From: Macrostomum lignano
Lineage: Eukaryota
Direction of reading: 5' to 3'
NCBI GenBank assembly: GCA_002269645.1
Contig: NIVC01000980.1
Location: forward strand, 372,001-436,000
Length of the DNA: 64,000 nt
Both the position numbers and the translations under genes were made by a program. Below are positions 13,298 to 41,050 of this stretch, one piece after another (positions within the stretch are counted from its first letter, which is position 1; every line of letters begins with the position of its first letter). The notes under the pieces were generated by a model. That model searched no databases. It was not told where the DNA came from and saw nothing but the letters and a program-made list of their open reading frames with translations.

Positions 13298-13462
13298 TCA
13301 GGCCACAGCCTCCGCCGCATTGGGCCCGGCCTCATCGTCGTACTCAACCGACGGGTTGCTCTTTAGAAAATGGGCCAGCTGGTTATTGGATAGGCTGGAG
13401 TTCATCGACCGGCGATCCATATCAGAGTCAAGCCCCATCCTGAAAGCGTTCACAACGCGAAC
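13298..13462 (-). CDS. PMCA: PMCA alternative terminal exon (short tail, VRVVNAFRMGLD...)
   Basis: CCCCCTCTCTCTCTCTAG|GTT acceptor in phase 0. VRVVNAFR matches IRVVNAFR of b-type PMCAs. 54 codons then TGA. Confidence 0.87.
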   Translation of the reverse strand, partial: VRVVNAFRMGLDSDMDRRSMNSSLSNNQLAHFLKSNPSVEYDDEAGPNAAEAVA

Positions 13463-14221
13463 CTAGAGAGAGAGGGGGGAAAAGGGGCTTAAGTTAACGG
13501 CCATTTGATTTAAGTTTGCGGTTTGTTAACATTACGAGCTCAAAGCGAACCTGCGAAAAGCTTTTTTCACAGTTTTTGGCTGGAAAACTCAATAAATAAC
13601 GACATCAAACAGGTCACGCCGAAACTTATTTAAAAATTATAAAATAATATTATAATTATAAACATCGCTTAATTAGCAATGTAGTGCAAGCTGGGATCAG
13701 CTGGGATCAATTCAGTGCAAGCATGTTTGGTGTGCGTGTCTGTGTGCTCGCGCGCAGATGAGAATTTTCTAATATATTACTTACTAACGTCTGTGATTTC
13801 AGTAGCAAGTGGCAAAAAAGATCCAATTTTAATAGAATTGTTTGAAAAAGATGACTCCAGGCCCTGACGGCACCAGAATAGGTGAATGAGGAACTGTAGT
13901 TTGGTTCTGATTGTCTATTCGTAGCATATTAACCTGGACTCCGGGGCAACGATTGATACATTGACTATATGTACCGGCGAAGCAGAGTCGTGCTAAAAAT
14001 CTGACCTTTAGGAATACCGAACGATAAGAGAGATCAACTTTTTAAAATCTGTGATAAATAAAGAGTAGGATAAAGTGCAAGTTTGTTTTCAGTGTGCCTG
14101 TGCAGAGCGGGTTACACGGAGAAGCAGCGGCGCAACTGTTGCTCATTTAATCTTCTAAAAAATTCTAGCAGTCGCACTTTTCACTTTCTATTAGAAGGTC
14201 CTGATCGCTTTGGCTATCTTA

Positions 14222-14712
14222 AATGGGGTAAGGGGGTGCAGCCAATTAAACTGGGGTAAGCTAGAATGCAGCCAATTAAACTGGAGTAAGGGTACAGCCA
14301 ATTAAACTGGGGTAAGGAATACAGCCAATTAAACTGGGGTAAGGGGTGCAGCCAATTTAACTGGGGTAAGGGATGCAGCCAATTAAACTGGGGTAAGGGG
14401 TGCAGCCAGTTAAACTGGGGTAAGGAGTGCAGCCAATTAAACTGGGGTAAGAGATGCAGCCAATTAAACTGGGGTAAGGGGTGCAGCCAGTTAAACTGGG
14501 GTAAGGAGTGCAGCCAATTAAACTGGGGTAAGAGATGCAGCCAATTAAACTGGGGTAAGGGGTGCAGCCAGTTAAACTGGGGTAAGGAGTGCAGCCAATT
14601 AAACTGGGGTAAGGGATGCAGCCAATTAAACTGGGGTAAGGGGTGCAGCCAGTTAAACTGGGGTAAGGAGTGCAGCCAATTAAACTGGGGTAAGGGGTGC
14701 AACTAGTTAAAC
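14222..14712. repeat. 27-bp minisatellite, about 18 copies
   Basis: Unit CAGCCAATTAAACTGGGGTAAGGGGTG. Confidence 0.95.
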
Positions 14713-15404
14713 TTGATCAATTAGTGACCTTCTTGGATTGGTCGTATGCTGGCTGAATGCCTTGCAGAGTGGATCGCTAGCGCATTGGAATTTTCAAGTG
14801 CAAACAAACACAGCTTAACAAAAGAACAATTTCATGGGAGTCGAAGGTATAAAAAACGGCAAGGTAGGACGACCACGATGGACACAGGCAGGACGAGACA
14901 CGTTGACGAGATGTGGGTTGAGACAATTTTTTGACGTTGCTGGGAGATAGATAATGAAGCGGACGAGAAGCTGTGCTCGGACTGAGGGCTAAAGCTCACT
15001 TGCCGTCTAACTGTTGAACTGAGCCGAGGTTCGGTTGTTATACGGATGTTCCAGGTCATTTTTTAGCTCCTGCCTTCAGTAACTTTCAGACCGATTCTAT
15101 TAGGAGTTGTTTCGCGCACATCTTAGCCAGTTTGCCTTTACTGTGGCCTGTTTTAGATTTTCTAACTTAAGCAGTACCCCTCCACCGACTGAGTTGGCAT
15201 GGCTTGGCAAGGACAGCAGTAGTGATGTGAAAGAAACAAAAAATTCATGATGATTTGTACGATAGATAGAAAATTGCCTGCGAAAAGAGACGCTAACAAG
15301 ATAAGAAAACAAAAACTGTTGACGTCGGAGTGGTCTGCGCAACTTTAGAGAGTTAAGGGAGAAAGAAGATAGATGGTGAGAATCATGATGAGAGCTGCGG
15401 TGGA

Positions 15405-15786
15405 GACAGTGTGAGAGTCAGGGTGGAGTCAGTGTGAGAGTCAGGGTGGAGTCAGGGTGAGAGTCAGGGTGGAGTTAGTGTGGAGTCAGTGTGAGAGTCA
15501 GGGTGGAGTTAGTGTGGAGTCAGTGTGAGAGTCAGGGTGGAGTTAGTGTGGAGTCAGTGTGAGAGTCAGGGTGGAGTCAGTGTGAGAGTCAGGGTGGAGT
15601 CAGGGTGAGAGTCAGGGTGGAGTTAGTGTGGAGTCAGTGTGAGAGTCAGGGTGGAGTTAGTGTGGAGTCAGTGTGAGAGTCAGGGTGGAGTTAGTGTGGA
15701 GTCAGTGTGAGAGTCAGGGTGGAGTTAGTGTGGAGTCAGTGTGAGAGTCAGGGTGAGAGTCAGGGTGAGAGTCAGGGTGGAGTCAA
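15405..15786. repeat. Modular 11-12-bp repeat (GAGTCAGTGTGA / GAGTCAGGGTG / GAGTTAGTGTG)
   Basis: Lies just 3' of the stop of the long PMCA terminal exon. Confidence 0.9.
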
Positions 15787-15829
15787 GATAATAGTGGTGA
15801 TGCCTACAATGCTGAGAGTCAGGACGCGG

Positions 15830-16294
15830 TCACACAGCGGGCGGGTCCTCCTCAACGATGGAGGCGCCGCCGGCGCTGGCTCCCGCGCCGAGCTGCAGGT
15901 GGCCGGAGCCGCCTAGCGGGCCAACCCAGTCGATGGAGTGGCTCTTGCCGCCAACTTGTGCGTGCGCGCGAAACACCCCCCCACTGGCAGCCCCGGCAAC
16001 GACGGCACTGGCGGAGCTGCCACCAGCCACTGCGGTCACCCTGCCGACTCCGTCTAAGCCGCCGACGCTGGAATCGGGCAGCGCGGAGGCCGATTCGGCG
16101 TCCTCGGCAGGGTGACCGGCGCCGCCGCTGCCGCAGGCGACGGCATCGTCAGCGGAGGCAAAGCGGGTCATGGGCCTGGGGTGGGTGTTCGACCGGCGGT
16201 AGAGCAGCATCTGGCGCTGCCGGCGCAGCTCAATGAAATCCTTGCGATCCTCCAAGTCCTCCAGGGTGCTTTTGAAGGCGCGGACGACGCGCAG
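15830..16294 (-). CDS. PMCA: PMCA alternative terminal exon (long tail, LRVVRAFKSTLEDLEDR...)
   Basis: ACGCAG|CTG acceptor in phase 0. Completes the CaM-binding motif QTQ-LRVVRAF. 154 codons then TGA. Confidence 0.85.
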   Translation of the reverse strand: MRVVRAFKSTLEDLEDRKDFIELRRQRQMLLYRRSNTHPRPMTRFASADDAVACGSGGAGHPAEDAESASALPDSSVGGLDGVGRVTAVAGGSSASAVVAGAASGGVFRAHAQVGGKSHSIDWVGPLGGSGHLQLGAGASAGGASIVEEDPPAV

Positions 16295-17656
16295 CTGCGT
16301 GGATTTTGATGCGGTTCGGAGATCGAGGGGGAAACGTGTTGGCTTGGCCGGTTGGGAGGCAGAGGTTGGCACTGGACGCAATTGGGGATTCCCTAGTTAC
16401 GGAAACTCCGAGGCTGGTGGAGCGGGCTGCCTCAAGTGAGCCGCGCAACTCGCTGGCATCCGACTCGAAGTCGTGCTTGACTACCGCTGAGCCTTTCCCT
16501 CCCTCTCCCTCTCCCCTCAGCCTCTCAGCCTCTCCCTGTCCCCGTCTATCTCTCAGCCTCACTCTAGACTCTAGCTTTCCCCTTCTTTTCTTCTCTATAA
16601 ATCCTTTCCCTCTGTATCCGCCTCTATTGTTCTCGTCGCGTCACGCAGGATTTCTGCGCGCTACGCAGGCCTCTGCGGAGCTGAACCGCGAACTCGCAAG
16701 GGCATGGGGGCAAACGGGAGGGCAAAAAGAAGGTCAAACAAAAAGGTGAACAAAAAAGTGCCTGAAAACTCAAGTGACAGAATGTGTACGAGCATCGCTA
16801 CTGCCCCCATCTCAATTTAGTAGTAAGAAGCGGGTGCGCGTGTTATCATACGAGTACTATAGAATATAAAATCAATGTAGCTAGCTCGTAAAATAAGTTC
16901 CGTGTCAACTAAAAATGACTTGTGTTCCACTTAAAGAGCTGTGAAGAAGACTTAAAAAAGTTTAGCAAGTTAAGCTTGAAATAATATAGCAAAGCACTCG
17001 TAGCATTCTAACTTGGCTACTAAATTGGGGGAAAAGATAGCTAAGCAACTTTAAAGCAAAATTCCTATAACGGTAGGAAACTTATAGTTATGGTGACTTT
17101 TTTTAGAAAATACATGCATAATTCCATTAATCCAACACCATGCTTACACCAACAGCTAAAGGTAATTAGCTAGCTGATCGTGGAGCAAGGATGCTTACGA
17201 GCGTAATTATCTATATGTACAGTACTAATAAAGATTTAGCAAAGGAATAGTTATCGTCATCGATGCCACTAACTGAAGATAAAGCAAATTATCGAAAATA
17301 TCAGAATCATGCAATCAAATGTTAGAACCGAAAGATAAATGAGAATGCTATTGTTACTACTCAGTAATAAGAATATGCGTAGTATTTGTTGCAAAATAAA
17401 CTGAGTTGGAATTTGGAAGCAACAAACAAAATATGCACAAACTGCTACACAATGGCTAATGATATCCGTGTTTCAGTTAAGAATCTACCTCGTAGATAAG
17501 AGGAACTTATTAGTAGCAAGCTTGCCAAAAGAAAAATGCAATCTACTAAACAGGTTTCGAACGGCTAAAATGAAAGAAAGTAGTGTATATACTGCAGTGT
17601 GCAGATCCAACACCGACATGTGTCTGAAGTTGGCTGGAGCTGTTCTAGCTACTTAC

Positions 17657-17665
17657 CGTTTGCAT
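17657..17665 (-). CDS. PMCA: PMCA candidate 9-nt microexon (MQT) at splice site C
   Basis: Minus strand reads CTCCTTCCCTCCCTTTTTATTCCTGCAG|ATGCAAACG|GTAAGT. Long pyrimidine tract, consensus donor, phase 0 to 0. Confidence 0.62.
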
Positions 17666-19328
17666 CTGCAGGAATAAAAAGGGAGGGAAGGAGACAGTGG
17701 AGCGGGAGGTACGGTAGGCAATAACGGAGCCATTGGTGAGAATTATACTATTCATTTAAGGGAACACATATTGGAAAAATAAATCCGGAAGAGTAAACTT
17801 AACTTGAACTATAGTAAGTCGGCTAAACTATATTTAAGCGAATTTTATTTAGCTTACTTTGAATTACCTTTCTAAGTTGAAAGTATGACAAAATAATAGA
17901 TCTTACTTTCCATAGTATAAATAAGAGTAAATAAAAAAATAATACAGATAGAAAATAATCATATTAATTCAGATAAATTTTTCGAATCGAAAAAAATATA
18001 TAGATGGGGTTGATTATATGTAGAAATAAATTTAACTTGTAATCTAAATATAGTTATTTACAAAATATTTTGTTCGCGATTATAAACCGGATATCGATTA
18101 AATCGTTTACAAAAATATTGTTGCCAATATTAGCAGACCAATCGATAACTATTCAAATAATGGCCAACGTGTTTCAGAAAATTTATTTTAAAAGCACTCT
18201 GCATCTCTACATTCATTATTCTAAACCTAAATGGTGCTTTTTTTCCAGTAAAACAACAAAAATGTCAATTAAATGTTTTAATTTATACGCTTTCATTGCC
18301 GCCACAAATTCACGTCTGCTATATTTAGCTGGTAGAACGAAAAAGAAACGATATTTTCAAACACGAATAGTTTGTTAAATTAAAATTTTGCGTGCGTTTG
18401 TTTTTAGCGCTCGATAGTAAAACGCGCAAAAATCGATAGAAACACGCGTAGAATTTCGCTATTTGACAGTTTCTAATGATCGTTAATTATTAAAATACAA
18501 TAATGTAGTTCGTATAGAGATGCCAGTATATGCGTAAACAAAATAACGTACTGTAGATATAAAGTAGTGCTTTGGACAGTAATAGTAGTTCAAGATGAAG
18601 CGAGACGAGATGACAGCGTTGCTTGTTTTACAATAAGGATAAAAATAATTTTTATCTTTAAAAAAGATTTTCGATAAACTTTACACCGAAAATCAAAAGT
18701 TACGGTGCAGATTTTTTAAGTAGCTCCAACGCCTTTCTTTGTTCCATTAGTTATTTTTTATGTTAGAACTACGAGCGTATATAGACACTACAAGCAATGG
18801 TAAAATTTCAGTAAATATTGAAACCACAAATAGAAGGAAGCAGCCTATATAGCTAATCAAGCGACAACACCGTATATAGTCGAGGTGGCAGGCTTGGGTT
18901 AAACTAAAGCGGTTGAGCGTGTATTTTTAGTATTTATGTTCTGTCAGGATGGGAGAGTAAAACACGACTTGAATTAGAGACTATAACAGAACTAAGGATA
19001 TAATCGATATAAATATGACACAGTATAAATAATGATAAACAAGCAATGGGCGTAATATACGAGCTAGTAGTGATGCTAACTGTACGTATTTGATAAACAA
19101 AGCATGCTAAAATTGTTTATTGATTTTGTTAGTTTGAACAAAACATGATTAACTATATAAGCTACACACGTCGCTATAAGCTTTTAGGTAGCCGCTGGGC
19201 CGAACTCGATGAGTTTTAAGAGTTGTTTCTTGACTCTCAGTTATCTTTCTTTTGTAGCTCCTCTTCTTCCGACTCATTTAATGGCTGCTGATCTTGCTTT
19301 TCCTGCTGCTGCTGCTGTCCGCGGCTGC

Positions 19329-19469
19329 TCAGCAGCCTGTCGCTGCTATTGGAACTCGGAGGCCCAGCCGCCTGCCGACTCCAACTATGGTCATTCGGCG
19401 CTCTTCGATCTTGCGCAGAGCCGACACCATCCAGGGATCGATTGAGCGCAACTCGTCTGCCCGTCGGCG
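19329..19469 (-). CDS. Candidate additional PMCA alternative terminal exon
   Basis: GC-rich island in AT-rich intron. CTGTACAG| acceptor. Phase-0 frame RRRADELRSIDPWMVSALRKIEERRMTIVG..TGC-stop. AATAAA on the minus strand at 19116-19121. Confidence 0.4.
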   Translation of the reverse strand, partial: RRRADELRSIDPWMVSALRKIEERRMTIVGVGRRLGLRVPIAATGC

Positions 19470-19914
19470 CTGTACAGTTGTTGTTGTTGACAAATGAAAG
19501 GTGAGGGAAATTGTAAAGGGGTTTGCGGATTGGGCGCGTCTTATTAGCACATGTATTGAGTCGGGTTGGCCGCTACTAAACCTCAATCGAATGAATAAGC
19601 CGATGAGTTTTCACTTAATCCGCTAGCGCTCTTAGGGCATCCAAGCGCTCTGGAAGAAGACCCCTTCCGTGAACTTACGAGAAAATGACAATTAAGCCTG
19701 ATCAGATCAGTGCATACAAACAATTGGGGCTGTTAAAGAGAGACCTTTTAACAATTGGATAGGAATCATTTTAAGTGTTAGTAACTGCGATTTAGTGTGT
19801 CAAAAACAGCACTCAAGGTGTAAAAAACAATGACGCCTCGATCGGGTGTTAGGAATGGCACTGCAGGTACCAACGATGGCATTTTTGTGTCTACCCTTCT
19901 TCTGTCAGGAAGAA

Positions 19915-20690
19915 TAAAGCTGTTTGAGCGTTGACACTTAATTGAGATGTCAAGAAGAATACCTGTTTGAGTGCTGACACTTAATTGAGATGTCAGGAAG
20001 AATACCTGTTTAAGCGTTGACACTTAATTGAGATGTCAGGAAGAATACCTGTTTGAGTGTTGACACTTAATTGAGATGTCAGGAAGAATACCTGTTTGAG
20101 TGTTGACACTTAATTGAGATGTCAAGAAGAATACCTGTTTAAGCGTTGACAATCGAGATGTCAGGAAGAATACCTGTTTGAGTGTTGACACTTAATTGAG
20201 ATGTCAGGAAGAATACCTGTTTGAGTGTTGAAACTTAATTGAGATGTCAGGAAGAATACCTGTTTAAGCGTTGACAATCGAGATGTCAGGAAGAATACCT
20301 GTTTGAGTGTTGACACTTAATTGAGATGTCAGGAAGAATACCTGTTTAAGCGTTGACAATCGAGATGTCAGGAAGAATACCTGTTTGAGTGTTGACACTT
20401 AATTGAGATGTCAGGAAGAATACCTGTTTGAGTGTTGACACTTAATTGAGATGTCAGGAAGAATACCTGTTTAAGCGTTGACAATCGAGATGTCAGGAAG
20501 AATACCTGTTTGAGTGTTGACACTTCATTGAGATGTCAGGAAGAATACCTGTTTAAGCGTTGACAATTGAGATGTCAGGAAGAATACCTGTTTGAGTGTT
20601 GACACTTAATTGAGATGTCAGGAAGAATACCTGTTTAAGCGTTGACAATTGAGATATCAGGAAGAATACCTGTCTGAGCGTTGAAATTTG
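19915..20690. repeat. About 43-bp minisatellite with a shorter variant, about 18 copies
   Basis: Unit GTTGACACTTAATTGAGATGTCAGGAAGAATACCTGTTTGAGT. Confidence 0.95.
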
Positions 20691-23600
20691 CAATCTATAC
20701 CTAGTCAAATGACAAAATTTCAAGTATCAGTACGCTGGTAACAGCCCCGGTGTCAAGAATGGCGCTGTAGGTGTCAGGAACACCACTTTAAGGATTCAGT
20801 GAGGTTAGAGAGGTTGGTTCCCAATAGTGAGTTTGCTAGGCTAGCAGATAAGATCACTCATCGGAGAATGCATCCGATTTCGGCTTAAAAAATTGGCTCG
20901 AAAAACCGAATAAAAAATGTCATATGCAGGAAAATGACGTATTGCTATAAGATACATGTGGTAATTTTGTAAGTGCGCTATTTAAAACCCGCATGCCACA
21001 TGACTGAGGTATTTTTAATAACTACGTAGTAGCAGTAGAAGAATGGAATTTTATTAAAAAAACCGGCCTTCTAATTTTTATTGGCCAGAGATTTATAACA
21101 TGTCTTAGTGTTGCGTGTTGAGCGATCCATCCTTCTACTTGAAGTTCTGTATACTCAAACCCATAACAATATATATTGGTAGTAGTATTGGTTTTAACTT
21201 ATTATATATATAAACTTACAGTGGTTACATATGGTAGCGATATAGATGGCATAAATATATTACTATATAAATATCGTATTGACAGCACATTTTCTTGTGA
21301 TCTTTTAGATATCTATATTTTAGATATTTATGTATAAGTTTGAATACGATTGTTTTGTTATACTGGTCTATCAACCATGCAGTTTTATTAGGAAATGTTT
21401 AATAAAGAAACAATTTTCTACTTGTATTTTGCTTCGATTAAGATAAATGTGATATTTATCATTGAGTATAGTTAGATACAAACTACGTAACAATATTCCA
21501 GGTTAATATGAGCATGACGAAGCAAAACGTGTGCAATGGTTTCAGATGAAATCAAATCAATTTGTCACTATATAATAGCAGATTGCTAAACATATTTGTT
21601 AGTTTAATGAAAAGTTGAGCTATCTATTTAGCATTATTTAAATTATAAAGTGCAAATTGCAAAGAATCTGATTACTTTTAATTATAAGTCTAAGTTTTGC
21701 GAAATAAGGTGCTACGGTGAGTAACGATTTGCAGTTAACAGAAAAAGTAAAAACAGGGAACGACTGGTTTATATAATACGGGCAACTCGATGGGATTACT
21801 AAACTCGGACGGCACGGCGCGGTTTAAGAAATGTTTTTTAAACACTTTTGTTAATTTTACATCGCTTCGTTTCTGAATATTTTTATTAATTATAATAAAC
21901 TATAGCTAATCACCTAACAACTTTTAATGTAGCTATCGATAATGGAAACGCAAAACTTAAATTTGCTACGTCAAAGCGAAGCTAAAATAATACGCTTGTT
22001 ATGTAATCATTTTTAAAAGCGAACATTAAATTGCTGGCAGTTTTTTAGCATGCGGTAGTTGATTATTCGGATATGCGAGTATTAATCGTGGTACAACAGT
22101 AAATATGATGGATAGTATATATAAGAATATTTTTTAATAATAGTATTCAATATTCACAATTATATTTGTTACGCCCCCCACTTTTCATTTTAAAAAATTC
22201 GATTGACAAATATTCAGCTGTGATTTTAATCTACATGTATCTACTACAACCTTAAGACTTTTACTCATTCGTTACTTTTATTTACATTTATAACGATATA
22301 ACTGCATATATATAACTCTATAACTTATTTAAACTGTGACTATATTTATCACTAAACATTGTATTGTCCAGATGAAATCCAAATCCGTTAAATCATATTT
22401 AACGAACGCGGATTTAGCTTTCAATTGTGGATTATAAGACGCCATGATATACATGTTCTATGTAGTTATTGATTTTAATGACTATTGTTTAATTGATATA
22501 CATGTGCATAATACATTCAAAGCTTACTTAATTAAACACGAAAGGCCGTAGGGGAGGCACAGACTTGTGAGGGTGGACTTGGGGCAAGAAAGATTATTAT
22601 ATGGGTCCTTGGCTGTGTGTACAAAGCCAATGTACAAAGGCTTGGTGAGTGGGGTGGGCAGAGAATAAACTTGTTTTGGACGCATACAGAATTATATATG
22701 TACGGCTCTGGGTGGTTTTGGGTTAGGTGGTAGGGCCTGTATGTACAATTGACACTATAGTAGCTATAATAGCTCGTACCTCCAAAGTCTAAACTCCAGT
22801 ACTCCAGCCCCAATTTTCATAGTAAAAAATGCAGCTAAAGCAAATGAATTAACTAGAGCAAGTTGATGTTATTTTTAAAAAGAATAAGTAAAAAATACAG
22901 AATTTGCTTACGTTTTGTTTGATTAACTACGGAGAGGCAGAGTCTGACTTGTAACACCGGAGAATATTGACGGCCGCTTGTTGACTTCTTCATGCTCAGT
23001 TATCACTTTTGTCGGATTCCAAATTTAGTATCCGCGCGGGAATAATTTTACCCATATTGGAGTGTAGATCGAGACATACGTGTACACATGTACAAAATGT
23101 ACAAGCTGGCGGTCAAAAGCCAGATATCAGGTTCTTTACATTCGGGGACTGGTGCAGGGGTTTGTGATGTTCAGGCTCAAGCTTTTGAAAGTGCAATTAA
23201 TAGATGGAAATAATTAACTCAGCAGCAACAGGCGATTGATCTCTCGTTGTCAACTTGGGGCAACAGTACAAAACAAACATTATTATATTGGAATAATCTT
23301 TCGAGTAATTTTGTGTGGCTGCATAGTTTTGGAAGATTCGATAACTCGTCTTCTGTTGGTACAAATAAAGAGATATCATGCGTTGCTGAGTATATTATTA
23401 GCCATATTTCTAAACTGCAAACCTCACTTTGAAAAGCTTTTTACATGTATGTAATATTAGCAATTTACTCCAGGTAATTGTATGTGTATAAGGTAAATCC
23501 GGACCCTCATTGCATAAGAAGAAAGAATTGACAACAGTGACGTACAACAATGGAGTCTTAACAGTAACAATAAGCATTAGCACGGATGCTTTGACTGCAA

Positions 23601-23767
23601 GCAGCACAGAGACAGACAAAAGCAACATAGTCAATTGGCTAGTTATAGCTAGCAAAGTCGCACCCAATCGTCTCTAGTGGCATTGATTATCTTACGGGTA
23701 TGCCCAACTTAATATTTTGTCTTAACTGATGAAAATGAAATCCGCAAAAGGCGAAAAAAATCTGCAA

Positions 23768-23842
23768 ATTTTTCATGTTAAATTGGTCTGTCACTTGAAA
23801 AAACGTTTAAAATAATGACAAGACCAATTTAACATGAAAAAT
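23768..23842. other. 75-nt near-perfect hairpin (pre-miRNA-like or tiny MITE)
   Basis: ATTTTTCATGTTAAATTGGTCTGTCA / TGACAAGACCAATTTAACATGAAAAAT, about 26-bp stem, one bulge, 22-nt loop. Confidence 0.5.
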
Positions 23843-24000
23843 CGATTAATGCGTCGTTAGAGCAGCATGTGAGGCACAAAATAGTGTGATTAGAACTTTC
23901 TCTGACACTGTTAAGAGACCCAATCACTGTTTTAGTGTTGAAAATCGTAAAATTTCCTATCTCCGTAGTGTCTTTTTCCGGTGAAACCTGCCTTTAAAAC

Positions 24001-24395
24001 TATTTCTAAACGAAAAGCTTTATGAATATCGATAGAGCAATAAGAAAGGCACAACATATCAAAAGATGAACTCTGGATCTGCCTCCCATCAAAAGCAATA
24101 ACAATTTATGTGCTGAAAAAATTAAAACCTCCTATCTCTGTAGTGTATTTTTTCGGCGAAAAGTTGCCTTCAAAATATTTACCATAGATTTCGAGTGTAG
24201 CGTCCTATATATATGTTTACTTGAGTAGTCCTTGAGGTTTTACTGTAAAAGTATACTACAGAGATAGAATAAATTCCTTTTTCAGCACATAAAGTGCTAT
24301 TGCTATTGATAGGAGGCAGACCCAGTGTTCATATTTCGATGCCTTGCCTTCCTCATAGCTCTATTAATACTCACAAAGCATCTCGTTTAGAAAAT
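24001..24395. mobile_element. MITE-like element with about 140-bp imperfect inverted arms
   Basis: 24001-24142 is the approximate reverse complement of 24255-24395. Related sequence at about 61083-61240. Confidence 0.55.
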
Positions 24396-25894
24396 TAGGA
24401 TTATGCTTAATTATCGACTCATTGGTTTTAGAAATCTATTTTGTTACTCTGTTACACATTTGCATGTAACAGAATCCTAAATTTTGTGACATTAGTTTCC
24501 CGTCCATCTACTTGAGTAGTCCTTGAGTCCCGACTGCGATTGTTGCAGATGGTCACACAGATAAATCAAAGCCACTAGGGCTCACTGGGCTTGACTGCCA
24601 TTTTGTTGTGGTTTAGCACAGATCTAGGCGTTATAAGCTGAGCATAGCAAATAATACGGTTAGTGATTGAAAGCACTTTATTAAATACAAACTCAAATAC
24701 AGACAAGTTCATCGTTTTAATTTCAATATTACCAAAATTACCAAAATTGATATAGAAAAATAATCAATCTATCTCCAACAGACATTATTAATTTAAATTA
24801 CTATTGTTTTTTTAAAATAACACTCACTTTACAATCAAGGTGGAAAATAAAGCAAAGTAAAAATAATGCTTAACTAAGCGCATATTAAATTGGCACACAG
24901 ATCGGCAATAACAAAAATCAAGATTGGCACGGGTCCAGCAAATTAAAAAAATAATCGATTAGCGAATCAAAGTAAGAAAAGATGGTTAACAAATTGCATT
25001 GCAGCAGCGGCGGCTATAAGCTTCTCATTAAAGTAGTTTGTAATATTTATTCTATTACGTAATCTAATTACGTAACCTTGATAAAGAATAAAAGTTTTGT
25101 TTAAATGCACCAGTTAAGTTTTGTAAAAAATGCGGATTAGGTCATTTTTCCGATCGTGCAAACACAGGTTGTTGTCTTTCACCAGGAAAATGACACCGCA
25201 TAATTATTAATGATGATATAAATTTTATAAAACGTTTAACGTGATTTGAACTGAAATTTAATTTCGAACAGAAATCCAATTTTCCGTATAATTCACATAC
25301 TTTTTGACAGACTAAAAGAAGCTCCAAAGAGAAGAATGCTTTCATTCCTACTGAGCAGTAGTAGTGTATGGCGCATTGTGCAAGCAAAAATGAAATTAGA
25401 TATTGATCGATAGAATGGACCCATTCTGTAACCGCCACCCCCGTCCCGAACCCTCCAATCCCCAGCGAACGACCCCCGCGGACACAAATTAGATTTTTTA
25501 ACAACCTTAGCTTCGCGGAAAAGCTTGGCTAAAGTCGCCATGCCAGCGACGCTAAATCGCCTGACGGCCGCCAATTGGCCGGGGACAGCGGCTGCAAATT
25601 GGAGCGAGAATTGCGGATTGCAACGGTCTCAGGCGTCTCCTTCTCTCTCAGCTTACTCCACATTCCGGTGTAAGGCATGATGGGACCAGAAAGAATGTGT
25701 GTGGATGGGAGCAACATTTCTGCGCTCTTCCACGTCGACACAAATTGGATATGAATTTTTCATTTACAATTATTTGTACTCTCTTTCTCATTTCTTCTCT
25801 TTTCTCTCGTTTCCTATCGCGCTCTGCTCCATTCATTCCCCTTTAACTCTCTTCTCTCCTCTATTCATTTTCCTTTAACCCTCTACTCTCCTCA

Positions 25895-26185
25895 CCTTCA
25901 TTTCCCTCAACCTCTCCTCTCCTTCATTCCCCTCAACCTCTCCTCTCCTTCATTCCCCTCAACCTCTCCTCTCCTTCATTACCCTCAACCTCTCTTCTCC
26001 TTCATTCCCCTCAACCTCTCTTCGCCTTTATTCCCCTCAACCTCTCTTCTCCTTCATTCCCCTCAACCTCTCTTCTCCTTCATTCCCCTCAACCTCTCTT
26101 CTCCTTCATTCCCCTCAACCTCTCTTCTCCTTCATTCCCCTCAACCTCTCTTCTCCTTCATTCCCCTCAACCTCTCTTCTCCCTA
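25895..26185. repeat. 26-bp polypyrimidine minisatellite, about 11 copies
   Basis: Unit TTCATTCCCCTCAACCTCTCTTCTCC. Confidence 0.93.
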
Positions 26186-26485
26186 TTCTCCCCAACCCAT
26201 CTAACAATAGCAAGATCAGTGTAGTGAGCAATGCAGAATACAGAACGGCACATAAAGCGCTTATACAAGCCACTGCTCAGTAAGGACGAACAAGGGACTA
26301 AATATAGCTATATGAAGATTGCCAAACTCTGGATCCTTCTCTGAATCGAATGATTTTCTCGTTATTCTGGGAACACGTTGGCCATCAATAGTTTTATTAC
26401 TCGTTTAGATAAAAATTCAATTCAATGACAAAAATTATCAAAGAGGTACATAGAGACACAGAACAGTGACAGAACAGCATCTTAC

Positions 26486-26677
26486 CTGCGTCTGCAGCCG
26501 AGCCAAGCCTCGGATCCACAACACCTGTCCCTTCTTGTTAATATCCGATTCAACATCCGTGAGCGAGGCCATCTGGTCGTACTGCTCCTCCTCGAGGATC
26601 TGTTCGATCTCCTGTTCCGTGCTGCCGCCAATCTCCAGGCACGAAGGCAGGACAGAGATTGGCACTGTGATCACCAA
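26486..26677 (-). CDS. PMCA: PMCA coding exon 13 (first half of the calmodulin-binding domain)
   Basis: ..KKGQVLWIRGLARLQTQ|GTAAGA, matching RRGQILWFRGLNRIQTQ. Phase-0 donor at splice site C. Confidence 0.95.
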
Positions 26678-26764
26678 CTGCGGCAATGGCGCGTTTGGGA
26701 TGAATAGAAATCATTGTTTCATTTGTGCAACTTTCTATAGATCTCTATAAATACTTTAGCGGCA

Positions 26765-27409
26765 AACCCCATCCAAGTAACTTGTGTCAGCTGACAGAAC
26801 CCCATCCAGGTAACTTGTGTCAGCTGACAGAATCCCATCCAGGTAACTTGTGTCAGCTGACAGAACCCCATCCAGGTAACTTGTGTCAGCTGACAGAACC
26901 CCATCCAAGTAACTTGTGTCAGCTGACAGAACCCCATCCAGGTAACTTGTGTCAGCTGACAGAATCCCATCCAGGTAACTTGTGTCAGCTGACAGAATCC
27001 CATCCAGGTAACTTGTGTCAGCTGACAGAATCCCATCCAGGTAACTTGTGTCAGCTGACAGAATCCCATCCAGGTAACTTGTGTCAGCTGACAGAACCCC
27101 ATCCAGGTAACTTGTGTCAGCTGACAGAATCCCATCCAGGTAACTTGTGTCAGCTGACAGAATCCCATCCAGGTAACTTGTGTCAGCTGACAGAACCCCA
27201 TCCAGGTAACTTGTGTCAGCTGACAGAACCCCATCCAGGTAACTTGTGTCAGCTGACAGAACCCCATCCAGGTAACTTGTGTCAGCTGACAGAACCCCAT
27301 CCAGGTAACTTGTGTCAGCTGACAGAACCCCATCCAGGTAACTTGTGTCAGCTGACAGAATCCCATCCAGGTAACTTGTGTCAGCTGACAGAATCCCATC
27401 CAGGTAACT
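26765..27409. repeat. 33-bp minisatellite, about 19 copies
   Basis: Unit CCCCATCCAGGTAACTTGTGTCAGCTGACAGAA contains the 12-bp palindrome TGTCAGCTGACA. Fills a PMCA intron. Confidence 0.95.
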
Positions 27410-27441
27410 AAGAATCGAAAAAAGTTTGCATTCTCTCTCAC

Positions 27442-27549
27442 CTGGTGCCAGACGAGGGTGCCAAAACCGAAGCAGAGGCACCAGAGCCAGTGGCTCAGCT
27501 CCAGACCGCGCGTTCTGAACACCATGCCGCCGTACTGGACAATCAGAAT
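27442..27549 (-). CDS. PMCA: PMCA coding exon 12
   Basis: ILIVQYGGMVFRTRGLELSHWLWCLCFGFGTLVWHQ (TM9-10). 108 nt, phase 0 to 0. Confidence 0.92.
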
Positions 27550-27722
27550 CTGCAGAAATTTATTAAGATCACTTTATAACTCAATAAGGTTCAATAAACT
27601 CAATAACGATGAGACAGTCGGGGCCGCTGTACACCCTGTGTGAGCGTGACTGCTCGCCTCCCCTCGGGTTGCGAGTCTTTGATTTGCGGCAGCGCCCCAA
27701 TGGGCCCTGCAAACTGACTAAC

Positions 27723-27925
27723 CTGGAGAACGAAGGTGGTGATCCAGATGAGCACAAACAGCAGGTTGCGCTGCAGGCCCGAGAAGATGTTCCGCTGGTT
27801 GTGAATCTTCCTGGCGTTGATTTCGTTGAACAGAGTCATCAGCACGAAGGCGTTAAATATAGCGGTAAAGTGCTCGGTAGGGACCCGGCTGCCAATCTCG
27901 ATGGGCGTGTCAATCATCTTGTCGC
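27723..27925 (-). CDS. PMCA: PMCA coding exon 11
   Basis: HFTAIFNAFVLMTLFNEINARKIHNQRNIF. CTAG|GC acceptor, CAG|GTTAGT donor. Confidence 0.93.
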
Positions 27926-28031
27926 CTAGAGATAGGTATTGGATTAGGTCATTGTAGCACAGTAGGTTATGACTAGTCTGACTACTCATGGGGTAATCCA
28001 TGCAATTGCAATAGAAAAGTTGGTTCCCTAC

Positions 28032-28245
28032 CGCAGAACAGCAGGAAGAAGGTGATAACCAGCTGGTAAAGCGCATTGCCCACAATATTCCTCAGCATGG
28101 TGGTGTCAATCAGCGGCTTGGTCCGGCCGTAGGGCTTTCTCTCAAGCAGCTCGTCGCTAGGCAGCTCAGTTGCCAGGGCCAGAGAGGCCAGCGTGTCCAT
28201 GATGAGGTTCACCCACAGCATCTGGATGGCTCGCAGCGGCGTGTC
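28032..28245 (-). CDS. PMCA: PMCA coding exon 10
   Basis: [37 protein letters not shown]. Donor G|GTAGGG, phase 1. Confidence 0.95.
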
Positions 28246-28459
28246 CTGTTTTGACGGGCAATGTACTTGTCAATGTACGGATCATACGATCACTCAATGT
28301 AAGTAAGTACGTGTGCATCGAATCTACTCAAATGCACCAATCTACACTCGAAATCTACTATAAAAATGAAACGAATTTACTCAAGAAACCTGTCATGGGT
28401 TACAAAAAAATCTACATGTAACAGCATTAAGGTTATAAAAAAGTGAATCCACACCTATA

Positions 28460-28835
28460 GGGGGCCGTAGCCCAGTGGTCTAGCGCGGCGCTCTTATGTG
28501 CCAGCGGCCCAGGCTCGATTCCCAGTGCAGTCGCATTAATTTGTAGCTAAATTGGAATCTCGGCTTGGCTCTGCTCGTGCAATTAACACCCTTGAGGGCC
28601 AACCCCCAAGGCACTGTGAAGTGTACATGCCTAATTAATGATAATAAAGTTAGGGCCGCTGTACACTCCTGTGTGAGTGTGTGCCTGTGCGTGTGACTGC
28701 GTACGTATCCGCGCGCTTGTGTGCCTGCTCAGGGGAGTCGGCGGAATGGGCAGTAATGCCTCTCGCCGGTTGTGTGACAATGTCGCTTAAAGTGCGCCAG
28801 GGTCCCTGTCAGACCCTGCCTCTAATAAAAAAATC
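28460..28835 (+). mobile_element. tRNA-derived SINE (second family)
   Basis: A-box TAGCCCAGTGG and B-box-like GGCTCGATTCCC, non-pairing acceptor stem, unique body, A-rich tail. A short piece of the body recurs at about 27620-27660. Confidence 0.6.
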
Positions 28836-28879
28836 CATACCCAACCTCAGTACCCAATGTCAGAGCATCTCAACCCTAC

Positions 28880-29266
28880 CGAGATGACGCAGGCGCTGAA
28901 GACGGCCACAACCACAGCGACAACGTTGACAGTTAGCTGGAACTGCAGGAACTTGGAGATCGAGTCATACACGTTGCGGCCCCACATAACGGCCTTGACA
29001 ATGCTGGAGAAGTTGTCGTCAGTCAGAATGATGTCGGAGGCCTCCTTGGCTACGTCAGTACCCTGGATGCCCATGGCAAAGCCGACGTCCGCTTTCTTCA
29101 AAGCCGGCCCGTCGTTGGTGCCGTCGCCGGTGACGGCGACAACCTCGCGACCGGCGGAAATCTTCGAGGCGATGATGCCGGAGACTAGGGTGTACTTGTC
29201 CTGCGGCGAGGAGCGGGCAAGGACGCGGAGCCGAGGCCACACCTGATCAAATCGGTCCTGGGTCAC
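28880..29266 (-). CDS. PMCA: PMCA coding exon 9
   Basis: [48 protein letters not shown]. 387 nt, phase 0 to 0. Confidence 0.96.
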
Positions 29267-29924
29267 CTGCGCAGGTTGAAGGTGATTATAATGTTTTCAT
29301 TTTTAGCCGTTAGGCACTGTAACGCATTTCGCTCAGTGGTCCTTGGTTGACCGCGTCAAGGGAATTCATCTCGCGCAAACTTGTCAGCCAGACTCATGAG
29401 CTAAGGTCTGCGATGCTACACACCGGCAACCCCTCTATTCTGATGCAGGAATGGCTGGGGAACCTTCTCCAAGCTGACTCACAAGCCGATCCAAGGGATT
29501 TGCGTACCGCATGTTTTCAAGGCAGTCCGGTAGTCCTAGGATTGCTGGACTTGACTTTTCACGTAGCCTTGTTGCATGGGTACGGGTTATCCAGGAAGTG
29601 TATCTTTGCGTACCAGGTGCCGGGGACAGGTGCTACTTTAAGGTCTGACTCAAACAGGCTAAGCGACCAGTCCACAAACCGCGGAAACAGCTTCCTTGTT
29701 TCTTTCAAGGGCCCCACGTAGTAACGCCTAAGACAGAACACATGCTTTTTAGATTTACAACGATCCATATGTCTATTTTTTAATTCTAAAAATGGAAAAA
29801 CGCTTCCTTTTCCTTCTAACTGAGAATTGTCCATACCCTTTAGGTAGAATGCTTCGGATTTGAGGACTGAATAAGCTCTGCATTCATCCCAATAACAAGC
29901 GAGGAATCTACCGGTTATTCTCAC

Positions 29925-30167
29925 CTGTCCAGTGTTGGGGTCGCGAATTCGCTTGTTGAAGTCCTTGCCCTCCAGTACGAGGAAATTTTCGCCCGGTTTC
30001 AGAATGCCACACTTGGTAGCGATGGACCGGGCCGTGTTGATGTTGTCTCCCGTCACCATGCGGACGCAGATGCCGGCGTTCTGGCATTTGCGAATAGCGG
30101 CGGGCACCTCTGGCCGCACCGGGTCCTCGATACCGATGACCCCGATGCAGGTCAGCCTTGACACCAC
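29925..30167 (-). CDS. PMCA: PMCA coding exon 8
   Basis: [39 protein letters not shown]. 243 nt, phase 0 to 0. Confidence 0.95.
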
Positions 30168-30254
30168 CTGGTGTTTTCGGGATGAGTAGCCATTGATAAG
30201 CGGACGCTTTTAAAACTGACTGAATTTGCCACTCGGCATCTCTTTGAAGCCTGC

Positions 30255-30725
30255 CACCTTACTAAACAAACAAAGTCACTTCCTTTGAAGTCTGCCGACT
30301 TACTAAACAAACAAAGTCACTTCCTTTGAAGTCTGCCGACTTACTAAAAAAACACGCTTATTCCCTTTGAAGTCTGCCGTCTTACTAAACAAACAAAGTC
30401 CCTTCCTTTGAAGTCTGCCGACTTACTAAACAAACACGCTTATTCCCTTTGAAGTCTGCCGACTTACTAAACAAACAAAGTCACTTCCTTTGAAGTCTGC
30501 CGACTTACTAAACAAACACGCTTATTCCCTTTGAAGTCTGCCGACTTACTAAACAAACAAAGTCACTTCCTTTGAAGTCTGCCGACTTACTAAACAAACA
30601 CGCTCACTCCCCTTGAAGTCTGTCGTCTTACTAAACAAACACGCTCACTCCCTTTGAAGTCTGCCGTCTTACTAAACAAACACGCTCACTCCCTTTGAAG
30701 TCTGCATGCCGCCAATTACTAAACA
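30255..30725. repeat. 41-bp minisatellite, about 11 copies
   Basis: Unit CTTACTAAACAAACAAAGTCACTTCCTTTGAAGTCTGCCGA. Confidence 0.93.
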
Positions 30726-30800
30726 ACAGCCTACCTCTTTAGAGTGTACGGCATTACAAATTAAACACTCAATCTCTTTCATTCACCAAAAGCGACTCAC

Positions 30801-31256
30801 CTGATCCTCATTGTCCCAGTCCGGTTCGCCGTCCAAAGGCACCTCGTTGGGCCCCAGCTGGCCGGAGCCGCGCGGCACGAACTCCTTGAAAGCGATGCCA
30901 ATCGTACGCAGACCGTCGCAGGCCATCGGCTCGATCACCTGGCGGACGATTTGCTCCTGCTCCGGCTTGCCGAACGGCCTTGGCTGGCCCTGGCCGTCCA
31001 GGATGAACGCGCACTTGCTCATGACCATCTCGGAGGCGCCTTTGCAGAACAGGATGTAGCCGCCGCCGGGCCTATTGATCACCGTGGTCATGGACTTTCG
31101 CACCGAGTTGAAGGTGTAGATCTTGTGGATGGCCTCCTCGGGTACCTCGCGTCTGTAGTCGTCATAGTGCTTGCCGAGGTCCAGCACCAGGCCCAGCAGG
31201 GCGCATTCGGTCTTGTTGCCCACTTGCTTGGGCAGCTCGTTGGCCACCTCGGCGGG
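30801..31256 (-). CDS. PMCA: PMCA coding exon 7 (N domain)
   Basis: QVGNKTECALLG..FNSVRKSM..KGASEMV..MACDGLRTIGIAF. 456 nt, phase 0 to 0. Confidence 0.95.
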
Positions 31257-31789
31257 CTGTACATTGATGTTCAATATAATGTACATTTTGTTGATGTTCA
31301 ATATAGGCAATGTACATTGAAATCATGATACTGGATGTAGTTTAAGTGACATTTCCCAATTTTTTGAGATATTTTTAGAGGCGCTTCATGACATTGTTAA
31401 GATTGGCTCGACATTGTTGAGGTTCCTTCTAGGAATTGTTCATGGTTGCTTCAGGGCATCATCAGTTACGAGCCGTAGGATTGATTCTTAGTAGTAGTTG
31501 TGACTCAAGCGACTGTGACCTAATCTAGCTCAAAAAGAGAATTCCGCACAGTGCAATGACTCTCGCTAAAGCTACAGGTAGACCTGAAATGATGAAGGAA
31601 CTGCAGGTTTCGACACAAAAGCTCAAAGCTTAAACAAGCAGTCTGCCTCGAGGCCGTCTTAGCCTGCTAATCCCCAGCCAATCGCCCACAAAGGCAGCGC
31701 TTTGGAAAAAGAGAAAATTGGGAATAAAATTGATTCCGACCGCATCGTCAAATTTGAGGAATAAGAAAATGAACAGAACATTGGCTCAC

Positions 31790-31899
31790 CAAAATCCGCG
31801 ACGTGTAGCCGCTATTAACTGAAATTGCTTTGCAAAGCATTTCGCTAATCTCTTTGGGATAGTCGCTGTACTTCTTGGTAATCTTCTTCTCCAGGGCCC
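31790..31899 (-). CDS. PMCA: PMCA coding exon 6
   Basis: GALEKKITKKYSDYPKEISEMLCKAISVNSGYTSRIL. CGCAG|GG acceptor (phase 1), TTG|GTGAGC donor (phase 0). Confidence 0.9.
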
Positions 31900-32099
31900 C
31901 TGCGGTAGAATTATGATTAACGAGTTCGAGTTAATTCAGGCAATCATTGTTGCTTTGATTCGATGAGTCCCAGGTTCGATTCTTATTTTGGAAGCAAAAT
32001 ATTGTTTTTTCATGTGGTAAAAACTTAAGGAGAGTTGAAGTGTGGAATTTTAGCTCGTAGTAGTATTTGACGTTTTCAATGTGATTCTGAAAAGAGGAC

Positions 32100-32425: not shown

Positions 32426-32508
32426 TCAAGGGTTCAAGAGATTAAGGCGAGGGGATTTTAGGGAGTGAATTTGTTGTTGGCTTTGTCGAGTGAATTTCAG
32501 CCACTCAC

Positions 32509-33042: not shown

Positions 33043-33071
33043 CTGCCGTGGGCAGGGATTGGCGAGTTGTA

Positions 33072-39830: not shown

Positions 39831-39895
39831 GATTTAAGTGAAATTTATATCCAAGCGTCTGCTAACAGTTAAAAACGTCAGAATTTCGAGCTCAC

Positions 39896-41030: not shown

Positions 41031-41050
41031 CCACAGACCCAAACACTCAC

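What the first reader, a model, noticed from the sequence alone, without database searches (positions are those of the whole stretch)
17657..17665. 9-nt microexon (Met-Gln-Thr) inserted in the middle of the CaM-binding/autoinhibitory helix
Seen: an ideal pyrimidine tract plus CAG, ATGCAAACG, then GTAAGT. It lies between exon 13 and both terminal exons and is frame-neutral. Inclusion gives RLQTQ-MQT-LRVVRAF (or -VRVVNAF), echoing the preceding LQT. Known: the PMCA CaM site binds through Trp/Phe anchors spaced 1-18, and neural microexons of 3-27 nt typically remodel interaction surfaces. Inference: a three-residue insertion moves the anchors to 1-21 and could switch autoinhibition or CaM sensitivity. 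Gene predictors would miss it.
Basis: partly seen in the sequence, partly recalled or inferred. Interest (0 to 1): 0.75.

Follow-up and report, generated by a model that had tools for sequence, protein, structure and literature searches.

The report
Conserved 9-base exon in calcium pump
A 9-base exon adding Met-Gln-Thr to the calmodulin-binding helix of a plasma-membrane calcium pump is very probably real, because the same exon sits at the same place in tapeworm and fluke genomes and is annotated there both included and skipped; its effect on the pump has not been tested.

Summary
ATGCAAACG (17665→17657) follows a 91%-pyrimidine tract plus CAG and precedes GTAAGT. It lies in phase 0 between the ...RLQTQ exon and two alternative last exons of a PMCA gene.

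Sequence alone is only suggestive: 0.017 such sites are expected per shuffled intron. Conservation decides it.
- AG|ATGCAR-NNN|GTAAGT occurs once on the gene strand, in the intron after the QTQ exon, in all four independent flatworm lineages fetched, encoding MQT or MQA.
- Flanking intron sequence is not conserved.
- Differences within the exon are synonymous, apart from Thr/Ala.
- GenBank models carry the insert: Hymenolepis microstoma CDS31938.1 (QTQ-MQT-LKVVNAF) and Dicrocoelium dendriticum CAH8519489.1 (MQA).
- Dicrocoelium also has the skipped isoform CAH8519498.1, and an assembled contig encodes the skipped form.
- An unidentified lineage carries the three codons fused into its last exon.

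So this is a conserved cassette microexon at the classical PMCA splice site C. The insert moves the Phe anchor from position 18 to 21 and puts Thr at 14 and Val at 18. Weaker calmodulin binding or autoinhibition is inferred, not shown. No RNA data exist for this unidentified species, and I found no paper describing the exon.

The parts
17657..17665 (-). 9-nt cassette microexon ATGCAAACG, encoding Met-Gln-Thr, phase 0/0
   Evidence: Sequence read. It is the only strict microexon-like site in the window. Orthologous 9-nt exons are ATGCAAACT, ATGCAAGCT and ATGCAGGCT in loci L004, L007, L005 and L001.
17666..17717 (-). 3' splice region: about 50-nt pyrimidine-rich tract ending in ccTGCAG, with a UGC at -5..-3. 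It lies inside an 80-nt zone free of AG.
   Evidence: The orthologous acceptors are also pyrimidine-rich, with AG-free zones of 72-123 nt.
17651..17656 (-). 5' splice site GTAAGT (full consensus)
   Evidence: GTAAGT is invariant at all five orthologous microexons (counting the window), whereas the donors of the upstream exons vary: gtaaga, gtatgt, gtgagt, gtgggt, gtaatt.
26486..26677 (-). Upstream exon ('exon 13'). It encodes LVITVP...KKGQVLWIRGLARLQTQ, the N-terminal half of the calmodulin-binding domain. Donor is CAG|gtaaga, 8,820 nt upstream of the microexon.
   Evidence: Matches Pfam PF12424. Aligns to PDB 2KNE chain B and 1CFF.
15830..16294 (-). First alternative last coding exon ('b-like'): LRVVRAFKSTLEDLEDRKD... 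through to a stop codon. Its acceptor has a weak pyrimidine tract. It lies 1,362 nt downstream of the microexon.
   Evidence: Homologous to LRVVRAFKSTLED... in spider, insect and Mya arenaria proteins and loci.
13298..13462 (-). Second alternative last coding exon ('a-like'): VRVVNAFRMGLDSDMDRRS... through to a stop codon. Its acceptor is strong. This is the exon type joined to the microexon in the flatworm gene models.
   Evidence: Aligned with the flatworm C-termini in alignment A1.
13298..46794 (-). Whole PMCA (P-type IIB Ca2+-ATPase) coding region that hosts the microexon. The upper bound is approximate; the first coding exon begins [25 protein letters not shown]...
   Evidence: tblastn of the full-length Dicrocoelium PMCA (P0170) maps 12 collinear segments from 46767 to 26480. 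The DKTGTLT motif is visible. All 120 best homologues carry P-type/PMCA Pfam domains, and all that carry a source name are Ca2+/cation-ATPases or uninformative names.

Best explanation
The 9-mer is a genuine, evolutionarily conserved cassette microexon of a plasma-membrane Ca2+-ATPase gene. It sits at the ancient phase-0 intron that splits the calmodulin-binding and autoinhibitory helix after ...RLQTQ, which is the vertebrate 'splice site C'.

When the exon is included, Met-Gln-Thr is inserted between the N-terminal half of the helix (W-x-RGL-x-RLQTQ) and the C-terminal half ([LV]RVV[RN]AF). Counting from the Trp anchor, inclusion has these effects:
- Hydrophobic residues are kept at positions 12 (Met) and 15 (Leu/Val).
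- The conserved Val14 is replaced by Thr.
- Val, instead of the principal Phe anchor, sits at position 18.
- Phe moves to position 21, about 4.5 A further along the helix and about 60 degrees round it.

The likely consequence (inferred, not shown) is a pump with altered calmodulin affinity or kinetics, and probably weaker autoinhibition. That would be analogous in outcome to the vertebrate 'a' variants but achieved by a register shift.

Recognition of so short an exon probably relies on its invariant consensus donor GTAAGT, its long pyrimidine tract and its long AG-free zone.

Shown here: the site, its frame, its conservation, and annotated included and skipped isoforms in relatives. Inferred: use in this species, regulation, and the biochemical effect.
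For: Conservation of the exon:
- AG|ATGCAR-NNN|GTR occurs once on the gene strand, in the intron directly after the QTQ exon, in every flatworm locus that contains that intron.
- Dicrocoelium dendriticum L001: ATGCAGGCT.
- Hymenolepis-like L004: ATGCAAACT. Trematode L005/L006: ATGCAAGCT. Cestode L007/L008: ATGCAAACT.
- The motif occurs only once in the 64-kb window, on either strand. A motif of about 20 bits falling in introns of 1.3-24 kb in four independent lineages is far beyond chance.

Pattern of constraint:
- In alignment A2 only AG, the 9 nt and GTAAGT are conserved; the flanks are not.
- Differences within the exon are synonymous (CAA/CAG, ACG/ACT, GCT/GCC), apart from Thr/Ala.

Protein-level evidence:
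- H. microstoma CDS31938.1 reads RLQTQ-MQT-LKVVNAF.
- D. dendriticum CAH8519489.1 reads RIQTQ-MQA-MKVVDAF. Its sister isoform CAH8519498.1, and a 1159-aa protein from an assembled 4.5-kb contig (P0170), lack the three residues.
- A genomic contig (L013) and relatives (P0130, P0176) have QTQ-MQA-MQVV[QH]AF within a single exon, so the insert-bearing pump can be the only form.

Splice signals:
- The strict splice-signal pattern is unique in the window, with 0.017 expected per shuffled intron.
- The donor GTAAGT is invariant in all five lineages and AG-free zones span 72-123 nt.

Location in the protein:
- The region aligns without gaps to the PMCA4b peptide bound to calmodulin in 2KNE, and to 1CFF.
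- The 1-18 Trp/Phe anchors and the importance of V14 and F18 are described in PMC12693652.
- Adding MQT lowers the PF12424 score by about 9-10 bits, so the insertion is atypical for the family.
Against: - No transcript or junction evidence exists for this species. Its proteins are absent from the searchable collections.
- The exon sits 8.8 kb from the upstream exon here, against 0.14-1.1 kb in the parasites. Here it is followed first by a b-like exon that the parasite loci lack. Its partner exon and its level of inclusion are unknown.
- No candidate was found in the 9 kb upstream of the b-like exon in the bivalve Mya arenaria. None of the other metazoan PMCA C-termini examined has the insert. 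The exon is therefore lineage-restricted.
- The biochemical consequence is pure inference. Calmodulin is plastic and may accommodate the insert with little change.
Confidence: 0.8

Rival explanations
1. The exon is real but constitutive in this species. It would always be spliced in, so it would not act as a regulatory switch.
For: An unidentified lineage has the three codons fused into its last exon, which amounts to constitutive inclusion. The splice signals here are very strong: 91% pyrimidines and a consensus GTAAGT donor.
Against: In Dicrocoelium both isoforms are annotated at one locus, and an assembled contig encodes the skipped form. A trematode-like intronless contig (P0010) also lacks the insert. 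A 9-nt exon lying 8.8 kb into an intron is rarely constitutive; that last point is general knowledge, not tested here.
Confidence: 0.12
2. The site is a chance splice-site-like motif in a long intron and is never used in this species.
For: Post-hoc pattern matching in a 13-kb intron. With a relaxed pattern (at least 60% pyrimidines, GTRAG donor) 1.3 sites per intron are expected, and 2 are seen. There are no RNA data.
Against: The same 9-mer, coding MQT, with the same AG and GTAAGT, is found at the orthologous intron in four other lineages and in annotated proteins. The strict pattern has an expectation of 0.017.
Confidence: 0.04
3. The site is a recursive-splicing or decoy exon. It would help remove the 10-kb intron stepwise and would have no role in the protein.
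For: It lies deep in a long intron and pairs a strong acceptor with a strong GTAAGT donor, as recursive-splicing exons do (general knowledge).
Against: - Joining exon 13 (...CAG) to ATGCAA does not regenerate a 5' splice site, so the defining feature of a recursive site is absent.
- In the parasites the exon sits only 142-1134 nt from the upstream exon, where no stepwise removal is needed.
- Substitutions are synonymous.
- The residues are present in annotated proteins and are fixed in one lineage.
Confidence: 0.04

Closest known systems
Vertebrate PMCA (ATP2B1-4) alternative splicing at site C ('a', 'b' and other variants)
   Same: Same gene family and the same phase-0 exon boundary after ...RIQTQ in the calmodulin-binding helix. 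The hits show QTQ|IRVVNAF (b) against QTQ|MDVV... (a). Splicing at this site changes the C-terminal half of the calmodulin-binding and autoinhibitory domain (PMC12693652).
   Different: Vertebrates include long exon inserts that replace the downstream half of the domain and the tail; the sizes (tens to about 200 nt) are from my own knowledge. Here a 9-nt in-frame exon keeps the downstream half and shifts its register by three residues. It exists in addition to a choice between b-like and a-like last exons.
Annotated flatworm PMCA isoforms: Hymenolepis microstoma CDS31938.1; Dicrocoelium dendriticum CAH8519489.1 (with MQA) and CAH8519498.1 (without)
   Same: Orthologous exon. It has the same position, the same length, the same AG|ATGCA...|GTAAGT signals, and the same (MQT) or near-same (MQA) peptide.
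   Different: In those parasites only an a-like last exon follows, and the microexon lies 0.14-1.1 kb from the upstream exon. In the window it lies 8.8 kb downstream, and a b-like last exon sits between it and the a-like exon. I found no publication describing the exon.
Insect and nematode cassette at the same junction (VIGGELQERLIPVPYSK-x-TDQA, about 23 residues)
   Same: An alternative, in-frame insertion between QTQ and IRVVNAF in protostome PMCAs (P0019, P0020, P0036, P0057, P0183, P0196, P0212).
   Different: The sequence is unrelated and the exon much longer. It separates the two halves of the helix completely rather than shifting them by less than one turn. It was not found in the window or in the flatworm loci.
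Srrm234/eMIC-dependent neuronal microexons (PMC8797185)
   Same: Length is 9 nt and a multiple of three, and it lies inside an interaction surface. It has a long AG-free zone, a long CU-rich pyrimidine tract, and a UGC just upstream of the acceptor. These are the features listed for eMIC exons and seen here.
   Different: Tissue specificity and dependence on the factor are unknown. UGC lies within 10 nt of the acceptor in only 3 of 5 lineages. The donor here is strong, whereas fly eMIC exons have weak donors.
Schistosome micro-exon genes (MEGs)
   Same: Flatworm spliceosomes routinely handle symmetric microexons (my own knowledge, not tested here).
   Different: MEGs are secreted-protein genes built almost entirely of microexons. 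This is a single microexon in a conserved ion pump.

Membership tests
PMCA (P-type IIB Ca2+-ATPase) | P-type ATPase core with the phosphorylation motif DKTGTLT and E1-E2, hydrolase and cation-ATPase-C domains | tested here: met
   [14 protein letters not shown] lies in the exon ORF 33094-32429. That exon matches PF00122. Twelve collinear tblastn segments map to a full-length Dicrocoelium PMCA. All 120 best homologues carry P-type/PMCA Pfam domains, and all that carry a source name are Ca2+/cation-ATPases or uninformative names.
PMCA (P-type IIB Ca2+-ATPase) | C-terminal calmodulin-binding autoinhibitory domain (Pfam PF12424; Trp and Phe anchors spaced 1-18) | tested here: met
   PF12424 scores 47.3 bits (b-like form) and 54.1 bits (a-like form) without the insert, and 38.2 and 44.2 bits with it. 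All exceed the 22.9-bit cut-off. The region aligns without gaps to the calmodulin-bound peptide of 2KNE.
Alternative cassette microexon (27 nt or shorter) | Short, symmetric exon flanked by a competent acceptor and donor | tested here: met
   9 nt, phase 0/0, 91% pyrimidine tract plus CAG, GTAAGT donor.
Alternative cassette microexon (27 nt or shorter) | Present in mature mRNA of this organism | not testable with these tools
   No transcript data for this unidentified species. No protein identical to the window's C-terminal exons turned up in either C-terminal protein search.
Alternative cassette microexon (27 nt or shorter) | Both included and skipped isoforms exist | tested here: inconclusive
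   Met in the orthologue: D. dendriticum CAH8519489.1 (included), CAH8519498.1 and contig protein P0170 (both skipped). Not tested in this species.
Alternative cassette microexon (27 nt or shorter) | Evolutionary conservation of the exon and its splice sites | tested here: met
   Five lineages counting the window (L005/L006 and L007/L008 each count as one): only AG, the 9 nt and GTAAGT are conserved.
Srrm234/eMIC-dependent neuronal microexon | Cis code: UGC near the acceptor, long pyrimidine tract, long AG-free zone | tested here: inconclusive
   In the window UGC lies at -5, pyrimidines are 0.86 and the AG-free zone is 80 nt. Orthologues have AG-free zones of 72-123 nt, but UGC within 10 nt in only 3 of 5. 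The feature list comes from PMC8797185.
Srrm234/eMIC-dependent neuronal microexon | Neuron-restricted inclusion that depends on the eMIC domain protein | not testable with these tools
   No expression data.
Recursive splice site or recursive-splicing exon | Ligation of the upstream exon to the site regenerates a 5' splice site (AG|GTAAGT) | tested here: not met
   After ligation the junction reads CAG|ATGCAA, which has no GT.

The most novel reading that the evidence does not exclude
The exon is an old register-shift switch. It would predate the split of tapeworms and flukes and is shared with whatever lineage the window comes from. Adding less than one helical turn would convert the PMCA calmodulin-binding and autoinhibitory helix from the canonical 1-18 Trp/Phe mode to a different mode: either 1-21, or 1-18 with a Val anchor. 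That would produce a pump with measurably different basal activity and calmodulin kinetics. It would be a third, previously undescribed way of tuning PMCA at site C, alongside the vertebrate long inserts and the arthropod 23-residue cassette.
Probability: 0.4. Interest if true: 0.7.

Novelty: new variant of a known kind. Interest (0 to 1): 0.6.

Why it matters
Splice site C is the classical point at which animals tune how strongly a plasma-membrane calcium pump is autoinhibited and how it responds to calmodulin. All described cases replace or separate the second half of the helix.

A conserved three-residue insertion would be a natural 'helix register' experiment. It moves the main Phe anchor by three positions while preserving the hydrophobic pattern up to position 18. 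That makes the roles of the V14 and F18 anchors, in calmodulin binding and in autoinhibition, directly testable with matched natural isoforms.

It also shows that a 9-nt exon in a housekeeping transporter has been kept across parasitic flatworms. That is relevant to annotating their calcium-handling genes. It also gives a simple motif (AG|ATGCAR-RCN|GTAAGT after the QTQ exon) for finding the exon in other genomes.

Tried and rejected
Searches that gave little:
- A protein search with the MQT-plus-b-like junction peptide returned only a spider fragment without the insert. In the larger search every listed hit was under about 730 aa, so full-length isoforms were mostly out of reach.
- H. microstoma CDS31938.1 has no genomic record in the contig index. 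A Hymenolepis-like assembled contig (L004) was used instead.
- Rfam finds nothing in the window.
It was rerun with three insert-bearing relatives. It found one further insert-bearing protein (P0176) and no insert in other animals.
- Literature searches for a PMCA/ATP2B microexon, or for flatworm PMCA splicing, found no description.

Loci that could not answer the question:
- Mya arenaria L009 has no 9-nt candidate in the 9.1 kb upstream of the b-like exon, but the QTQ exon is off the locus.
- The Schistosoma curassoni L011 and Protopolystoma L012 contigs lack the QTQ exon, so they are uninformative.
- In the spider locus L010, QTQ and LRVVRAF are contiguous, with no intron.

Things not achieved:
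- The organism could not be identified. The best identities are only about 60-76% and fall across flatworms, insects, nematodes and annelids. No 100% match to the window's exons was found.

Readings rejected: chance motif, recursive splice site and purely constitutive exon (see rival explanations).

Full report
**Observation.** The feature is on the minus strand. Read 5'->3' the sequence is ...ctcccgctccactgtctccttccctccctttttattcctgCAG|ATGCAAACG|GTAAGTag. The exon occupies 17665->17657, the acceptor CAG 17668-17666 and the donor 17656-17651. Pyrimidines make up 91% of positions -25..-4, and no AG occurs in the 80 nt upstream of the acceptor AG.

**The host gene.** It is a plasma-membrane Ca2+-ATPase on the minus strand.
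- Twelve collinear tblastn segments to a full-length Dicrocoelium PMCA run from 46767 to 26480.
- The DKTGTLT motif is present.
- The exon at 26677-26486 ends ...KKGQVLWIRGLARLQTQ|gtaaga in phase 0.
- Two alternative last coding exons follow. The first is LRVVRAFKSTLEDLED... (16294-15830). The second is VRVVNAFRMGLDSDMD... (13462-13298).

**Chance.** I defined a strict pattern: at least 75% pyrimidines, AG, 3-27 nt in frame without a stop, then GTAAGT. It occurs once on both strands of the whole window. Its expectation is 0.017 per 13-kb intron in 300 dinucleotide shuffles. A relaxed pattern is expected 1.3 times per intron and is seen twice. The sequence alone is therefore suggestive, not conclusive.

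**Proteins of relatives.** Among PMCA C-termini retrieved by homology, two flatworm proteins carry a three-residue insert exactly at this junction.
- Hymenolepis microstoma CDS31938.1 reads WLRGLNRLQTQ-MQT-LKVVNAFRMGLDS.
- Dicrocoelium dendriticum CAH8519489.1 reads RIQTQ-MQA-MKVVDAFRMGL.
- The Dicrocoelium cluster also contains CAH8519498.1, which is three residues shorter and reads QTQ-MKVVDAF.
- It also contains a 1159-aa protein from a 4.5-kb assembled contig that lacks the insert.
- Included and skipped forms are therefore both annotated at one locus.
- Two Paragonimus models and an intronless trematode-like contig protein (P0010) lack the insert.

**Genomic loci of relatives.**
- In the Dicrocoelium locus L001, MQA is a separate 9-nt exon, cttgcag|ATGCAGGCT|gtaagt, lying 142 nt after the QTQ exon.
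- I searched every fetched locus for AG|ATGCAR-NNN|GTR. It gave exactly one hit on the gene strand in each locus, always in the intron after the QTQ exon.
- L004 (Hymenolepis-like): ATGCAAACT. L005/L006 (a trematode): ATGCAAGCT. L007/L008 (a cestode): ATGCAAACT.
- The window has one hit on either strand, at the reported site. The 88-kb Dicrocoelium locus has one extra hit, on the opposite strand and without a pyrimidine tract.
- In the alignment of these regions only AG, the nine bases and GTAAGT are conserved.
- Differences inside the exon are synonymous (CAA/CAG, ACG/ACT), apart from Thr/Ala.
- The microexon donor is GTAAGT in all five lineages, while the donors of the neighbouring upstream exons differ in every lineage. 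AG-free zones upstream of the acceptor are 72-123 nt.
- This is the signature of selection on a coding microexon and on the strong signals needed to recognise it.

**A lineage with the insert fixed.** Genomic contig L013 has several PMCA exons separated by short introns. It and its relatives (P0130, P0171, P0172, P0176) encode ...RLQTQ-MQA-MQVV[QH]AF... within one exon. The insert-bearing pump can therefore be the only form in an organism, which argues that it is functional.

**Distribution.**
- An exhaustive profile search of the representative library found no insert in the other PMCA C-termini listed, from vertebrates, insects, nematodes and others.
- Insects and some nematodes have an unrelated cassette of about 23 residues at the same junction.
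- The bivalve Mya arenaria has the same order of last exons as the window (b-like, then a-like). It has no 9-nt candidate in the 9.1 kb upstream of its b-like exon.
- The parasite loci have no b-like exon.
- The window's organism could not be identified. Identities to all hits are 60-76%.
- By its exon order it resembles a spiralian with the ancestral arrangement. By the microexon it groups with flatworms.

**Where the insert falls in the protein.**
- The region aligns without gaps to the PMCA4b peptide bound to calmodulin in PDB 2KNE, and to 1CFF.
- PMCAs bind calmodulin through a 1-18 motif anchored by W1 (Trp1093) and F18 (Phe1110). V14 is a further conserved anchor, and F18 is a principal one (PMC12693652).
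- With MQT, position 12 is Met (was Leu/Val) and position 14 is Thr (was Val). Position 15 is Leu/Val (was Val) and position 18 is Val (was Phe). Phe moves to position 21.
- The insert therefore preserves the hydrophobic stripe at 12, 15 and 18. It removes V14 and swaps the aromatic anchor for Val, or forces a 1-21 spacing.
- The Pfam model of this domain loses 9-10 bits when MQT is added.
- The inference is altered, probably weaker or faster-exchanging, calmodulin binding and altered autoinhibition. This is not demonstrated.

**Comparison with known systems.**
- The boundary is the same one used by vertebrate site-C splicing, but the mode differs. Here it is a 9-nt in-frame register shift, not replacement of the distal half.
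- The cis features resemble those listed for eMIC-dependent microexons: UGC near the acceptor, a long pyrimidine tract and a long AG-free zone (PMC8797185). Neuronal specificity and factor dependence are untested, and UGC is near the acceptor in only 3 of 5 lineages.
- It is not a recursive splice site. Ligation to exon 13 gives CAG|ATGCAA, which regenerates no donor.
- No paper describing a PMCA microexon was found. The exon exists only as unremarked features of two public annotations.

**Verdict.**
I put the probability that this is a genuine conserved coding microexon at about 0.9.
- Alternative, rather than constitutive, use in this species is likely but unshown.
- The proposed effect on calmodulin binding and autoinhibition is a reasonable, testable inference.
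- It is a new variant of a known kind of regulation, of moderate to good interest.

Noticed in passing
window 5990-63996 (for example 26765-27409, 36842-37799, 47529-48877, 44003-45226): Almost every intron and intergenic stretch carries a long, highly homogeneous minisatellite. Periods are 14-84 nt, arrays run to about 1.3 kb, and copies are 84-99% identical. More than 25 arrays occur in 64 kb. These produce the long spurious repeat ORFs seen.
   Followed up: partly
window 16294-15830 and 13462-13298; L009 9150, 10922, 17107: The order of alternative last exons (b-like LRVV[RK]AFKSTLED first, a-like [IV]RVVNAFRMGLD second) is the same in the window and in the bivalve Mya arenaria, which has a third exon, IRVVNAFQTDLD. 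The parasitic flatworm loci have only the a-like exon.
   Followed up: partly
window 16295-16354 versus 13463-13522 (minus strand): The acceptor of the b-like last exon has a poor pyrimidine tract (ccgaaccgcatcaaaatccacgcag). The a-like exon has a very strong one (ccccttttcccccctctctctctag). This suggests a regulated choice between the two tails.
   Followed up: no
L013 3660-4142; L002 190-672: An unidentified organism (runs ERR14173670 and SRR23782939) has QTQ, MQA and the a-like sequence fused in one last exon. Both flanking introns have been lost and the insert is fixed.
   Followed up: partly
proteins P0019, P0020, P0036, P0057, P0183, P0196, P0212, P0025: Insects and some nematodes have an unrelated cassette of about 23 residues ((V)IGG-x-L-x-ERLIPVPYSK-x-TDQA) at exactly the same QTQ junction. 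This boundary is a recurrent hot spot for in-frame insertions across protostomes.
   Followed up: no
L010 10085-10177: In the spider Trichonephila clavata locus, QTQ and LRVVRAF are contiguous, so the site-C intron is absent. The PMCA is annotated there as several short separate genes.
   Followed up: no
window 5395-9478 (+), 55840-56292 (+), 62881-63423 (-): Neighbouring genes, from ORF fragments. One matches the NELF-A N-terminal domain weakly (20.8 bits, below the cut-off). One is a clear homeodomain (50.3 bits). One matches a UFD1 N-terminal subdomain (31.8 bits, below the cut-off).
   Followed up: partly
window 15830-16170 (minus strand): Beyond about 45 conserved residues, the b-like tail continues for some 110 residues of Gly/Ala/Ser-rich low-complexity sequence before the stop. 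Just downstream of the stop lies a minisatellite (15399-15785). Whether an internal donor shortens this tail is unknown.
   Followed up: no
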